Positions 354-11,129 of a DNA stretch of 64,000 bases are shown here, piece after piece; within the stretch, counting starts at the first letter, position 1, and every line of letters begins with the position of its first letter. Both the position numbers and the translations under genes were made by a program. Below the pieces are notes generated by a model. It searched no databases. It saw nothing but the letters and a program-made list of their open reading frames with translations, and was not told the origin of the DNA. Source of the DNA: Magallana gigas (taxonomy: Eukaryota); the NCBI RefSeq assembly GCF_963853765.1, contig NC_088857.1, positions 19,344,001 to 19,408,000 on the forward strand, given 5' to 3'.

Positions 354-3300
354 CTGTAAAGTGGCATGGAGCTCTCCCACTTGGGGAACACCCTAGCGAT
401 GCTGTCCCTCATCTGAGGGTGGTGGGCCTGGTAGAAGTATGAGTCGTGGGCGAACTTGAGGGCCAGCATGTCCAGGGGGTTCTCCTCCAGTATTGACTCC
501 CAAACCAGGCACGCCTCCGTCATTTCTCTGGAAAATGGCGACAGTGACAAATACAAGTATATCAGCGGACACGGTATGGCAAAATTTGGGTATATTTTTG
601 ATATATGAATGGCTTTATTTTTTAATGTGCATGATGTATCATTATTAATGTTGTTAAATACTTTGGTGTACAGTTTGCATACACCGAATGACTTTCAAAT
701 ATCTACCAACCAAACAAAAAAACCACGGTGCTAAGTGTTTAATGCATATGATCTTTTAAAATAACAAGCTTGATTTCTTTTTAATTGTGTTCATTTATAT
801 TTCTAGATCTTCTAACAAAACATAAAATTAAGTATAAACACAGGTGTTGTTTATAAGCTGAAACACACCCTTGAGCCCACAGTTTGACAGCATTGATGTG
901 CTTTTTCTCGCGTGGGAGGGTGCTAGGACTTTTCTCAAGATCCATCATGGTCTGAACCTCCGCCTGGAAGTCTTTGTCTAAATAGTAACTCCGACCTGTT
1001 CCGAGTGCATCCAAACCGTTCTTGATCACGTGACCCATCACTAATGAAATAAACAATGTATTTAGGAGAAATCCAAAAATTCACGATGTTCATAATTTCT
1101 TCTTGATGACATGTTCTGTATTTGAATATAAAGCAATTTTAATACAATCTAAAATGCTACATCTTATGTTACATTGTAGTGACTCTGACGCCAGTCACTC
1201 GTGAATGGTACGTACCAAAGTTTGGATCGTTGCCAATCATTTTTTCCACGGACTTTTCGAGTCCTCCCAGACTGTCATCATCGTACCATCCCACGTACTG
1301 GAAAATACCATTACAAACTTACTGGTCGAAATCACGATTTGTACCTTTACTATATTCTACCATCGGCATAGTTACAAGAAATTAATATACTAATTTGCAA
1401 TTTCATCCCGATATGCTCTTTGTCTTTTTATTTGCTCAGCTCGATTTTGAAGATTAGCATTTATTCAAAATTGTGTCCCAAAAGATAGGAGCAGTACCTG
1501 TGTCAAAACAGCATCGAATAACTTGGCCGCCTCATTGTTCGTGGTGGACAGTTCAACCCCAAAATCTTTCCAGGCCTGTGATAAAAATACTTTTGTTTTA
1601 ATTATTTAATAATGCAGAAAAGACTAGGTTCCAAAGTTTCGGTACAACGATGCGATTTTTTTATCAGATTTTTAATCGACTTCTATATATTCTTAGGTAA
1701 GTCGACTGTTGAGATGGTCACACGATAGGGCTAGGATTTTCACAATCGATTTTCGATTAATGAAACATATTGTACAAAAAAAAAGGTTATTGTGATGTCA
1801 CGATTCTCACCAGAGAGTCGATAAAAAAATCGGAGGCACTTCAAATTTTCATTCGGCTTTCAGACTTTGCTTTCAACTTTCGACTTAATATAAAACGGTA
1901 CGATTTTAGTAGAAATTAGCGAATAGGATGGAAAATTTGATGCAAAATCTTCGTGTGACCGTACTTTAACACCTTGTACGCCCGTGTTCTTTGCAAACTT
2001 TTAATTTTCACAATATAATTGACTTGTATTACCACAGGTGCTTGTGGACTGGACCGTGCACTCCCCCCCCCTTTTTTCTATATTTTTTTTCAAAATTTTT
2101 TTTTAATTTCTTTTATTAATTATCATTAACAACCCCTTATATATGTCTCCAGCCGAAAAATAAAAGAAATATTACGACTTGGTAGCATTTTATAATCACA
2201 CTCGTTTCCCCTATATATATATATAAAGAGAGAAGGTAAGCAACTCCCGTTTGTTTACATTGAGGTACCACCTGGGAAATTCAAACGATTACTATATCAA
2301 AAATCGGTATACCTTTGGTGTCATCTATTTTTCTCACTTCCACACATATCCTTCTATCTGAAAACTTATATAAATTAGCACGCTGAACCGTAATCTATCC
2401 AATTAATAAACATTTGTCACTCGCGACCACGATATTTTGAAACGTTCCAAGTTGAAGCTACGGAAGTTAGCTGCACAGCGACATCTATGCTAAGATCGAT
2501 AACTCTTCCCGTGTTCCGAATGTCATTGACTTAACGGTAACGCACGAGAGGCCCGAAAAAAAGTTCGAGAAAAGTTTTAGATTAAATGCAAAATTTCAGC
2601 ATTTGAATATCTGCCGTCTTCTATGCCAGCCCACCTATGAAGTGTCTGGGCTTTCAAATCCTGGTAATGTGTTGCTGCAATGCCTGTAGAGCAAACTATT
2701 GATACTTCTTTTTTTTGAGTATACCTAATGTGTTTTGCAATTTTTTTGTTATGTATGTTTTGCCTGTCCCAGCTTGGCCAGTGATGACCAAGTTATGGCC
2801 ATTAATTGCTGCTTGAAAGGTAAACAATTGATCTACATCCATTTTCTTAAATATTGCGCTAAAACTTTTCCCGAACTTTTTTTCGGGCCTCTCGTGCGTT
2901 ACCGTTAAGTCAATGACATTCGGAACACGGGAAGAGTTGCAGCTAACTTCCGTAGCTTCTACTTGGAACGTTTCAAAATATCGTGGCCGCGAGTGACAAA
3001 TTTTTATTAATTGGATAGATTACGGTTCAGCGTGCTAATTTATATAAGTTTTCAGATAGAAGGATATGTGTGGAAGTGAGAAAAATAGATGACACCAAAG
3101 GTATACCGATTTTTGATATAGTAATCGTTTGAATTTCCCAGGTGGTACCTCAATGTAAACAAACGGGAGTTGCTTACCTTCTCTCTTTATATATATATAG
3201 GGGAAACGAGTGTGATTATAAAATGCTACCAAGTCGTGATATTTCTTTTATTTTTCGGCTGGAGACATATATAAGGGGTTGTTAATGATAATTAATAAAA

Positions 3301-3807
3301 GAAATAAAAAAAAAATTTTGAAAAAAAATATAGAAAAAAGGGGGGGGGGGGAGTGCACGGTCCAGTCCACAAGCACCTGTGGTATTACTGGTATTATCGA
3401 TAATGCAAATGGTTTTGAAACATTCAAATTCTAATTCATCTGAGTACATTTACACGATGTTTATCCTGAGAATATTTTTGACTGTCATTCGACAAATCTA
3501 TAAACACTGATGTTCCCCAGCCTAGATTAGAATATCATGTCCCAAACATGCTGCCATACACTCTTAACTGAAAGCAAAATCTTCCAAGGATAAAAACATT
3601 GTTAAATACGTCGTACAAAAGTTAAACATTTACCAATTCATTATTGCAATGCATTTTCATGCAGCTGCACGTTAAATTAGCGTCGTAATACATTTCTGTA
3701 GGGCGTTGAGTTATTACCTTTGTACAGGTAAACAAATTAACAAGTAGTTTTAAGTGGACACCTTCAAAAGCCTAAATTACCTTGCAATCTCTCCAATTAT
3801 TCCTCAT
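354..3807 (-). CDS. TTC38: Tetratricopeptide repeat protein 38, 5' part (continues beyond window start). Coding exons 3781-3807, 1498-1575, 1216-1297, 869-1040, 354-527
   Basis: Exons join in phase with GT-AG to give [78 protein letters not shown]...KLWAQG-EMTEACLVWESILEENPLDMLALKFAHDSYFY, matching the known TTC38 N-terminus. Confidence 0.93.
1633..1968. mobile_element. Degenerate non-autonomous TIR element remnant (Kolobok-like ends)
   Basis: Imperfect inverted ends aaagtttcggtacaacga / tcgtgtgaccgtacttt in TTC38 intron 1. Confidence 0.35.
2033..3381. mobile_element. Foldback-type non-autonomous DNA transposon (Galileo/P-like) with ~525-550-bp TIRs and 7-bp TSD GTATTAC
   Basis: 2033-2580 is the near-perfect reverse complement of 2859-3381 (left arm has an extra ~25 bp). 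Termini CACAGGTG...CACCTGTG. GTATTAC at 2026-2032 and 3382-3388. Confidence 0.9.
2581..2842 (-). pseudogene. Truncated, frameshifted Pif1-family (SF1B) helicase N-terminus inside the foldback element
   Basis: ATG at 2842: MDVDQLFTFQAAINGHNLVITGQAGTGKTYITKKLQNTLGILKK, then a frameshift in an A8 run, then EVSIVCSTGIAATHYQDLKAQTLHRWAGIEDGRYSNAEILHLI. Walker A (GQAGTGKT), motif Ia (STGIAA) and motif Ib (TLHRWAGI) are present. Confidence 0.85.
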
Positions 3808-3860
3808 TGCGTTGCCCTTGCTCATATACAAATAACACCCTCTACCCACTACTTCCCTGG

Positions 3861-4419
3861 ACTGGGTACACTAAATCCTTGGTGATGGAGACAGTTTTGG
3901 TTGAACTTTGACGATGTAAATATTTTTTACTTGGCTAGTCAATACGACAACCCACTCAACCATAAAGTCAGTGGGTTTAAATCTTGCAAAACTATCAGCA
4001 CGCGTTTGGCGTGCAATGCAGAGCTATCCTTTTTACTTTAATTATATTGTACAGTTTCCTAAACTGAATTACAACACTGTTGCAGTTCCATTAAAAGGGC
4101 GTGGTTAAATCTGCCTTCGGACTTTTTTTGGGTTTGACCACGCCCCAAGCAAAATTATCAGCTCATAATTCCTAAATTGATGCATGCACTAGAACAAGTT
4201 TAATGTGCAAGTCGCTCTTTAATCCGATGGCTGCAGATTTAACCGCACCCTTTGTAAACAGTGATGTTCCAAGGTTGAAGAAACTGCACTACACGCCAAA
4301 CGCGAGCGGATCGTTTTGCAAGATTTAAACCCATTTTAAAGTTGAATGTGCTGTCGTGTAAAAAATATTTAGCGTAACCAGAACTGGGTCTAAATATCCC
4401 AGGATTTAGTGTACCCAGT
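3861..4419. mobile_element. MITE with 19-bp TIR containing a nested ~160-bp MITE (4096-4253)
   Basis: Outer TIR actgggtacactaaatcct / aggatttagtgtacccagt; inner aaagggcgtggttaaatctgc / gcagatttaaccgcacccttt. Confidence 0.6.

Positions 4420-5676: not shown

Positions 5677-11129
<5,453 letters not shown>

What the first reader, a model, noticed from the sequence alone, without database searches (positions are those of the whole stretch)
2026..3388. Galileo-like foldback transposon with a 7-bp GTANTAC target duplication in a non-insect genome
Seen: arms of ~525-550 bp, CAC...GTG termini and an exact 7-bp TSD, GTATTAC. Known: Galileo (P superfamily, described from Drosophila) is the foldback element with very long TIRs and a 7-bp TSD of palindromic consensus GTANTAC. 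Inference: this is a Galileo-type or related P-family derivative in a probable mollusc.
Basis: partly seen in the sequence, partly recalled or inferred. Interest (0 to 1): 0.72.

Follow-up and report, generated by a model that had tools for sequence, protein, structure and literature searches.

The report
Deleted P-type transposon, 8-bp target duplications
This is an ordinary non-coding, internally deleted copy of a P-element-type cut-and-paste transposon of a bivalve. Its match to the fruit-fly Galileo target sequence is a one-off, because 34 of 35 sister copies have unrelated 8-bp duplications. The family's full-length parent is less ordinary: it carries a PIF1 helicase gene beside the transposase.

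Summary
Window 2033-3381 is a 1349-bp foldback element with arms of 548 and 523 nt, a 278-nt loop and CACAGGTG...CACCTGTG tips. It is flanked by an exact GTATTAC on both sides.

The Galileo reading does not hold. I tabulated 35 properly paired copies from the same genome. 34 have an exact 8-bp target duplication with no GTANTAC pattern, and the window copy is the only 7-bp case.

The P-superfamily reading does hold.
- Two 6.9-kb parent copies have the same ~550-bp arms and 8-bp duplications.
- They encode a P/THAP9-type transposase: Pfam PF21787, and a profile match to the solved P transposase 6p5a.
- The window copy is a simple 5.6-kb internal deletion of that parent. At least 10 copies share the same breakpoints.
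- The loop is the first ~87 codons of the parent's second gene, a PIF1-like helicase with a PHD finger.

This two-gene, long-arm layout recurs in three more divergent families of this genome, in an ark clam and in a hemichordate. I found no paper describing it. Earlier notes of this scan (s1-356060, s1-399275, s1-394923) reported the pairing on other DNA.

No THAP domain was detected. Both parent copies here are broken.

The parts
2026..2032 (.). Left flanking direct repeat GTATTAC (7 bp). Atypical for this family, whose duplications are 8 bp.
   Evidence: The 8 bp before the tip read TGTATTAC and the 8 bp after the other tip read GTATTACT, so only 7 bp repeat.
2033..2580 (+). Left terminal inverted repeat (arm), 548 nt, tip CACAGGTGCTTGTGG...
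   Evidence: It is 95% identical to both arms of the 6.9-kb parent L031.
2581..2858 (-). Loop: the remnant of the parent's interior lying just inside one arm. On the - strand it holds the start (ATG at 2842-2840) and about the first 87 codons of the PIF1-like helicase gene, including the Walker A motif GQAGTGKT, with one frame change.
   Evidence: window element 545-1349 matches L031 element 837-1. (translations).
2859..3381 (-). Right terminal inverted repeat (arm), 523 nt. It carries a 25-nt deletion relative to the left arm and to the parent.
3382..3388 (.). Right flanking direct repeat GTATTAC (7 bp).

Best explanation
Window 2033-3381 is a non-autonomous, internally deleted copy of a P-superfamily cut-and-paste DNA transposon of a bivalve. 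The parent is 6.9 kb and has ~550-bp terminal inverted repeats. Just inside each repeat begins one of two convergent genes: a P/THAP9-type DDE transposase and a PIF1-like helicase with a long C-terminal extension and a PHD finger. The window copy keeps both repeats plus 280 bp of the helicase 5' end and has lost the 5.6 kb between them. That one deletion product was then mobilised in trans and amplified to at least 10 copies. Shown here: the structure, the parent-derivative relation, the P-type transposase, and the 8-bp target duplication of the family. Inferred: the transposase recognises the repeats and integrates with an 8-bp stagger. The deletion probably arose by incomplete gap repair after excision, as is known for P elements. 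The repeats probably carry an inward-facing promoter, because both genes start 10-60 bp inside identical repeats. The GTATTAC flank of this copy is a rare 7-bp event or a 1-bp loss after insertion. It is not a family property and not a link to Galileo.
For: The tip 24-mer occurs 83 times on each strand of the genome and 0 times in the reversed control. 34 of 35 paired copies have exact 8-bp duplications with no shared sequence. Two 6.9-kb copies, L031 and L032, are 97.8% identical, have the same arms, and have 8-bp duplications GTGTATAG and TACCAAAG. Their long ORF matches PF21787, the TNP-like RNase H N-terminal domain, at E = 6.7e-14. A profile of five own-genome paralogs matches the solved P element transposase 6p5a at E = 2.2e-8 in two stretches, aligning the SD(G) and D-I-V-E catalytic motifs. 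D416 and D516 are invariant among paralogs, and the glutamate motif SDVIENIF lies in the following ORF. Database relatives are named 'Transposable element P transposase-like RNase H'. The window element equals L031 element 1-837 plus 6399-6949. Ten 1.35-1.39-kb copies share the loop at 98-99% identity. The target sites show C at -3 and G at +11 in 31/68 symmetrised sites, against a 17% background. That is a 14-bp palindromic span, the same span reported for P element target sites (PMC4168063).
Against: No THAP DNA-binding domain was detectable in the N-terminal 380 residues, even at E up to 10. The GTP-binding insertion domain (PF21788) was not detected in this family's protein; it appears only in some relatives. 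Both parent copies in this assembly are broken. In L031 the transposase changes frame near codon 640 and the helicase changes frame several times. L032 has 14 stops in the N-terminal part. No current source of transposase is therefore shown. No phylogeny against Galileo, 1360 and P was possible, and Repbase and Dfam were not available.
Confidence: 0.92

Rival explanations
1. It is a Galileo-type element: a member or close relative of the Galileo lineage, whose transposase makes 7-bp duplications at GTANTAC.
For: The arms are long (~550 bp), the tips are CAC...GTG, and this one copy is flanked by GTATTAC. That is exactly the Galileo consensus in D. willistoni (PMC4168063). Single copies of two related families also have 7-bp flanks: GTGACAC in this genome and ATGAAAG in Ptychodera.
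Against: 34 of 35 copies of this family have 8-bp duplications and none fits GTANTAC. The arms have no internal direct repeats. No THAP domain was found. The parent carries a second gene that Galileo does not have. With the local base composition a random 7-mer fits GTANTAC about 3 times in 10,000 (my arithmetic), so one such copy among ~80 is a modest coincidence.
Confidence: 0.03
2. It is a foldback MITE of another 8-bp-duplication superfamily, such as hAT, and the P-type gene in the long copies is a passenger.
For: An 8-bp duplication alone does not separate hAT from P.
Against: Both long copies hold the P-type gene directly inside the arm. Four further families and two other species show the same tips (CACRG), the same long arms and the same P-type gene in the same position. 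No hAT or other transposase domain was found.
Confidence: 0.02
3. A sub-question about the 7-bp flank. It is either a true 7-bp staggered integration at a near-palindromic site, or an 8-bp duplication that later lost one T at a junction, or an assembly slip.
For: For a true 7-bp event: with the 7-bp reading the site keeps both C at -3 and G at +3 (CTT-GTATTAC-TGG), which is the family's palindromic preference. About 2% of natural P insertions are not 8 bp (PMC3698922). 7-bp flanks occur in related families. For loss of a base: the rule is 34/35 at 8 bp, and a T stands beside the repeat on both sides.
Against: One copy cannot decide. The empty site would read the same under all three readings.
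Confidence: 0.55

Closest known systems
Galileo (P superfamily, Drosophilidae)
   Same: P-type transposase in the parent. Very long terminal inverted repeats that give a foldback look. Many internally deleted two-arm copies. CAC tips. Palindromic target preference.
   Different: The family duplication is 8 bp, not 7, and has no GTANTAC consensus. The arms have no internal tandem repeats. No THAP domain was detected. The parent has a second gene, a PIF1-like helicase with a PHD finger. The host is a bivalve.
Canonical P element, zebrafish Pdre and THAP9
   Same: Split RNase H-type DDE transposase homologous to 6p5a. 8-bp target duplication with a ~14-bp palindromic target span. Internally deleted non-autonomous copies (PMC7776569).
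   Different: The arms are ~550 bp rather than 13-31 bp. THAP was not detected. The GTP-binding domain is not recognisable by Pfam in this family. There are two genes instead of one.
BuT5 MITE with its P-element master (Drosophila repleta group)
   Same: A non-coding short element that shares only its ends with a P-type master and is mobilised in trans. The duplication length is not perfectly fixed (PMC3698922).
   Different: BuT5 has 3-bp inverted repeats and 8-9-bp duplications. Here the whole long arms are shared and the derivative is a plain deletion.
RAG-like (RAGL) transposons
   Same: By analogy only: a cut-and-paste element with two convergent genes, one a DDE transposase and the other a partner protein with a PHD finger, and with CAC tips (PMC7204232, abstract).
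   Different: The transposase superfamily is unrelated (Transib/RAG1) and the duplication is 5 bp (from general knowledge). The partner there is RAG2-like, not a helicase.
Helitron/Helentron Rep-helicase proteins
   Same: A Pif1-family helicase encoded by a eukaryotic transposon.
   Different: No Rep/HUH nuclease domain is present here. The helicase starts with its Walker A segment right at the inner edge of the arm. The element has inverted repeats and target duplications, which Helitrons lack.

Membership tests
P superfamily of DNA transposons | The autonomous member encodes a transposase homologous to the P element/THAP9 RNase H-like catalytic domain. | tested here: met
   PF21787 at E = 6.7e-14 in L031 and 1e-10 to 1e-16 in four paralogs. 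The profile matches PDB 6p5a at E = 2.2e-8. Relatives are named P transposase-like.
P superfamily of DNA transposons | Conserved acidic catalytic triad (D, D, E; D230/D303/E531 in the Drosophila protein, PMC7776569). | tested here: met
   D416 (IDEM) and D516 (STDG) are invariant in alignment A1. The second D and the E of the D-I-V-E motif align to 6p5a. The E motif SDVIENIF is present in the L031 downstream ORF. Mapping these residues to the numbered Drosophila residues is inference.
P superfamily of DNA transposons | Target-site duplication of 7-8 bp. | tested here: met
   8 bp in 34 of 35 copies and 7 bp in one.
P superfamily of DNA transposons | N-terminal THAP zinc-finger DNA-binding domain. 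| tested here: not met
   No THAP match in the first 380 residues of L031, of the L036 paralog or of the Tegillarca protein P0001, at E up to 10. A set of invariant cysteines (C193, C226, C242, C245) may form another zinc site.
P superfamily of DNA transposons | GTP-binding insertion domain inside the RNase H fold. | tested here: inconclusive
   PF21788 was not reported for this family but is precomputed for relatives P0005, P0059, P0068 and P0072. The 6p5a alignment runs across that region at low accuracy.
Galileo | 7-bp target duplication. | tested here: not met
   1 of 35 copies.
Galileo | Target consensus GTANTAC (PMC4168063). | tested here: not met
   None of the 34 other copies fits. The position table shows only weak G at position 1 and C at position 8, plus C at -3 and G at +11.
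Galileo | Very long terminal inverted repeats. | tested here: met
   ~550 bp in the parent and in the window copy.
Galileo | Internally repetitive arms with multiple THAP-binding sites (PMC3688188, PMC3573991). | tested here: not met
   No direct-repeat family was found in window 1500-4000, and no THAP domain in the transposase. Binding sites themselves are not testable here.
Galileo | The transposase groups with Galileo rather than with P or 1360 in a tree. | not tested
   No Galileo, 1360 or Drosophila P sequences could be brought in by reference. Repbase was not available.
hAT superfamily | hAT-type transposase in the autonomous member. | tested here: not met
   The only transposase domain in the long copies is P-type.

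The most novel reading that the evidence does not exclude
The window copy belongs to an old and widespread lineage of P-superfamily transposons that nobody appears to have described. Its members have 300-570-bp inverted repeats, CACRG tips and a THAP-less P-type transposase. That transposase is always paired with a PIF1-like helicase carrying a PHD finger, either convergent with it or with the transposase gene nested antisense inside the helicase gene. The pairing is kept across families that share only 33-38% transposase identity, and in a bivalve of another order and in a hemichordate. This suggests the helicase is a working part of the transposition cycle. One possibility is that it drives long-tract repair synthesis, which would recopy the element into the gap left by excision.
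Probability: 0.5. Interest if true: 0.65.

Novelty: new variant of a known kind. Interest (0 to 1): 0.4.

Why it matters
The flagged point would have put a Drosophila-restricted lineage in a mollusc, and it falls away. What remains at the coordinates is a routine deletion derivative. It is useful for repeat annotation of the genome and as a clean example of a P-type family with an 8-bp duplication, a P-like palindromic target span, and three size classes (6.9 kb, 1.35 kb and 0.2-0.6 kb).

The wider value lies in the parent. A P-type transposase that lacks the usual THAP domain is consistently coupled to a PIF1-PHD helicase and to long inverted repeats, from bivalves to a hemichordate. If the helicase takes part in transposition or in repair of the donor site, this would be a new two-protein form of a well-studied transposition system, and it could be tested directly in cell assays.

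Tried and rejected
- **PDB search:** a single-sequence search with the L031 transposase ORF found nothing. Only the five-sequence profile reached 6p5a.
- **Pfam, relaxed threshold:** scans at E up to 10 found no THAP in the transposase N-terminus and no P-transposase C-terminal domain. This covered the helicase extension and the 191-aa tail ORF.
- **Arm homogenisation:** I tested whether the two arms of one copy are kept alike by conversion. They are not: within-copy identity is 97.2% and between-copy identity is 97.0-97.4%.
- **Reads:** No read-based check of insertion polymorphism, expression or the 7-bp junction was made, and I did not attempt it by another route.
- **Priapulus relative:** the context of P0080 was not on record.
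- **Literature:** searches found no paper that joins the P superfamily with a Pif1-like helicase. The library lacks Repbase reports and many subscription papers, so this is weak evidence of absence.
- **Rejected readings:** a Helitron remnant (no Rep domain; the element has inverted repeats and duplications) and the Drosophila Foldback family (no relation shown; the parent's transposase is P-type).
Full report
**1. The observation**

- The element runs from 2033 to 3381 (1349 bp).
- The left arm is 2033-2580 and the right arm is 2859-3381. They pair at 97-99% in three blocks.
- The blocks are offset because the right arm lacks 25 nt that the left arm has at 2476-2500.
- The loop is 2581-2858.
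- The tips read CACAGGTG... and ...CACCTGTG.
- The terminal 32-mer occurs exactly twice in the window, once on each strand, with none expected by chance.
- GTATTAC stands directly outside both tips (2026-2032 and 3382-3388).
- As single-stranded DNA the element folds into one hairpin of -643 kcal/mol.

**2. The family in the same genome**

The genome is 564 Mb in 29 contigs, and the window is C5:19,344,001-19,408,000.
- The left arm finds 45 scored matches at 81-97% identity, apart from its own two arms.
- The 24-nt tip, with up to 2 mismatches, occurs 83 times on each strand and never in the reversed control. That gives roughly 80 elements.
- I cut out 35 copies whose two tips pair properly and compared the flanks.
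- 34 of them have an exact 8-bp direct repeat. Examples are CGAACGTC, GATTACCC, TCTACTTA, GCATGTAC, ACCGAACA and GACGAGAC.
- The window copy alone has 7. Its 8 bp on the left read TGTATTAC and its 8 bp on the right read GTATTACT.
- None of the other 34 fits GTANTAC.

Galileo makes 7-bp duplications with consensus GTANTAC, and GTATTAC in D. willistoni. The P element makes 8-bp duplications, with about 2% exceptions (PMC4168063, PMC3698922).

**3. Target preference**

I rebuilt the 34 empty sites and counted bases on both orientations.
- The duplicated 8 bp are only weakly biased: G at position 1 and C at position 8 in 22 of 68.
- The strongest signal lies outside them: C three bases before and G three bases after, in 31 of 68 against a 17% background.
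- This is a 14-bp palindromic span. The literature reports the same span for P element sites (PMC4168063).
- The window site reads CTT-GTATTAC-TGG, so it keeps both the outer C and the outer G under the 7-bp reading.

I therefore lean slightly towards a true 7-bp integration over a later loss of one T. One copy cannot decide this, and the empty site would look the same either way.

**4. The parent**

Two pairs of arm matches lie 6.9 kb apart on contig 2. I fetched them as L031 and L032.
- They are 97.8% identical over their full length.
- Their arms are about 550 bp.
- Their duplications are GTGTATAG and TACCAAAG, both 8 bp.

The evidence that the transposase is P-type:
- One long ORF matches Pfam PF21787, the N-terminal RNase H domain of P/THAP9-type transposases, at E = 6.7e-14.
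- The genome holds several intact paralogs of 780-828 codons at 34-41% identity.
- A profile of five of them matches the solved Drosophila P element transposase 6p5a at E = 2.2e-8. It aligns the second catalytic aspartate and the D-I-V-E glutamate motif. The triad is described in PMC7776569.
- Database relatives at 30-63% identity come from other bivalves (Tegillarca, Mytilus, Pinctada, Pecten, Saccostrea, Mercenaria), a gastropod, a hemichordate and a priapulid. Those that carry a name are called P transposase-like.

Two usual features were not found. There is no THAP domain, even at E up to 10. The GTP-binding insertion domain was not recognised in this family.

**5. The window copy is a plain deletion product**

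Its positions 1-548 match the parent's 1-549. Its positions 545-1349 match the parent's 837-1 on the other strand. It therefore keeps parent positions 1-837 and 6399-6949 and lacks the 5.6 kb between them.
- Ten copies of 1349-1391 bp were collected. Nine carry the whole 278-nt loop at 98-99% identity, and in the tenth (L011) only the first 137 nt matched, at 95%. So one deletion product was amplified.
- Arms are about 97% alike both within and between copies, so there is no sign of arm-to-arm homogenisation.
- A second, older class of 200-600-bp elements consists of only the outer ~190 bp of both arms. They are 86-95% identical to the parent.
- One 1.38-kb copy sits inside another family member, and each has its own 8-bp duplication (L015).

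**6. What the loop encodes**

On the - strand the loop starts with ATG at 2842-2840. It reads MDVDQLFTFQAAINGHNLVITGQAGTGKT..., the Walker A start of a Pif1-family helicase, and then changes frame once.

In the parent this gene begins about 10 bp inside the arm. It continues through the PIF1, Pif1-2B and UvrD-C motifs, a ~545-residue extension with no Pfam match, and a PHD finger. The transposase gene starts about 60 bp inside the other, identical arm and runs towards the helicase gene.

I infer that the arms carry an inward-facing promoter. This is not shown.

**7. The pairing is not an accident of one family**

Three other families in this genome have the same parts. Their transposases are 33-38% identical to this one and their helicase parts 28-44%.

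| Locus | Arms | Flanks | Layout |
|---|---|---|---|
| C1:63.69 Mb | 300 bp | AATTTAAC (8 bp) | transposase gene antisense inside the helicase gene |
| C2:41.18 Mb | 362 bp | GTGACAC (7 bp) | transposase gene antisense inside the helicase gene |
| C9:20.22 Mb | ~320 bp | GTACATAT (8 bp) | convergent genes |

Two other species show it as well.
- **Tegillarca granosa (ark clam):** a 7.25-kb element with ~570-bp arms and an 8-bp duplication, CATTTCAT. Its tip, CACAGGTACTTGTTGACAGG, is close to ours. It has an open 792-codon transposase frame, convergent with a helicase-PHD gene. The transposase is 62% identical to ours and the helicase 54-70%.
- **Ptychodera flava (hemichordate):** a 14.8-kb element with 318-bp arms, tip CACAGTCG, 7-bp flanks ATGAAAG and the same gene order.

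In both the oyster and the ark clam the PHD part sits in another frame just after the extension. This suggests a conserved short intron, which is an inference.

I saw the helicase and PHD matches before consulting earlier notes (before). Earlier notes of this scan report the same pairing on other DNA of this genome (s1-356060, s1-399275) and report the loop as a Pif1 N-terminus (s1-394923). I count them as leads, not as support.

Two literature searches found no paper that links a P-type transposon with a Pif1-like helicase. A Drosophila preprint reports that the host's PIF1 promotes processive synthesis during double-strand gap repair (10.1101/554550, abstract). That makes a role in refilling the excision gap a reasonable guess, but it is untested here.

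**8. State of the family**

Both parents in this assembly are broken.
- In L031 the transposase changes frame near codon 640. This is a frameshift and not an intron, because the ark-clam gene is one open frame there. The helicase start has several frame changes.
- In L032 the N-terminal transposase part has 14 stops.
- Copies of the 1.35-kb class differ by about 3% from each other.

The family is therefore young but not shown to be active now.

**9. Surroundings**

The nearest recognisable coding sequence is the C-terminal (MLLE-type) end of a poly(A)-binding protein gene, on the - strand at 5914-6147. The element lies about 2.5 kb beyond that gene's end, either in its 3' region or between genes.

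**10. Limits**

I did not try another route, so insertion polymorphism, expression and the 7-bp junction are unchecked.
- No tree against Galileo, 1360 and P was made, and no comparison with Repbase or Dfam.

**Verdict**

P-superfamily membership is supported, with the THAP criterion unmet. The Galileo affinity is rejected apart from the long arms. The object in the window is an ordinary deletion derivative. Its parent lineage is a new variant of a known kind.

Noticed in passing
L031 1067-4223 (+) and L032 3887-6686 (-); window 2581-2842 (-): The parent's second gene is a PIF1-like helicase that starts with Walker A at the inner edge of the arm. It has no Rep domain, a ~545-residue extension with no Pfam match, and a PHD finger in a separate frame.
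   Followed up: partly
G000 C1:63697499-63705902, C2:41185024-41193306, C9:20223629-20235262 (L065-L070): Three more divergent P-type families with 300-360-bp arms, CACRG tips and the same helicase-PHD partner. In two of them the transposase gene lies antisense inside the helicase gene.
   Followed up: partly
G000, tip CACAGGGGCTCGTCACGAAGTT: The C2:41.18 Mb family has 160 forward and 152 reverse tips in the genome. Many pair at ~110-130 bp and ~860 bp, so it is a far more numerous MITE population than the window's family. Its one full copy has 7-bp flanks, GTGACAC. The family's duplication length could not be tabulated.
   Followed up: no
L071 9403-16655 (Tegillarca granosa) and L072 9265-24039 (Ptychodera flava): The same two-gene, long-arm P-type element occurs in another bivalve order, with an open transposase frame and an 8-bp duplication, and in a hemichordate, with 7-bp flanks.
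   Followed up: partly
L015 782-3076: Nested insertion: a 1379-bp copy (duplication CCTTCTTG) sits inside another member of the family (outer duplication CTTTCGCA).
   Followed up: no
window 5914-6147 (-) and 7575-8858 (-): Exons of a poly(A)-binding protein gene (an MLLE-type C-terminus and RRM segments) lie downstream of the element on the - strand.
   Followed up: no
window 2063-2105 and 3309-3351: A poly-C/poly-G run (9-12 nt), followed by T-rich or A-rich runs, lies 30 nt inside each tip. Its length differs between the two arms and among copies, and it accounts for most small indels near the tips.
   Followed up: no
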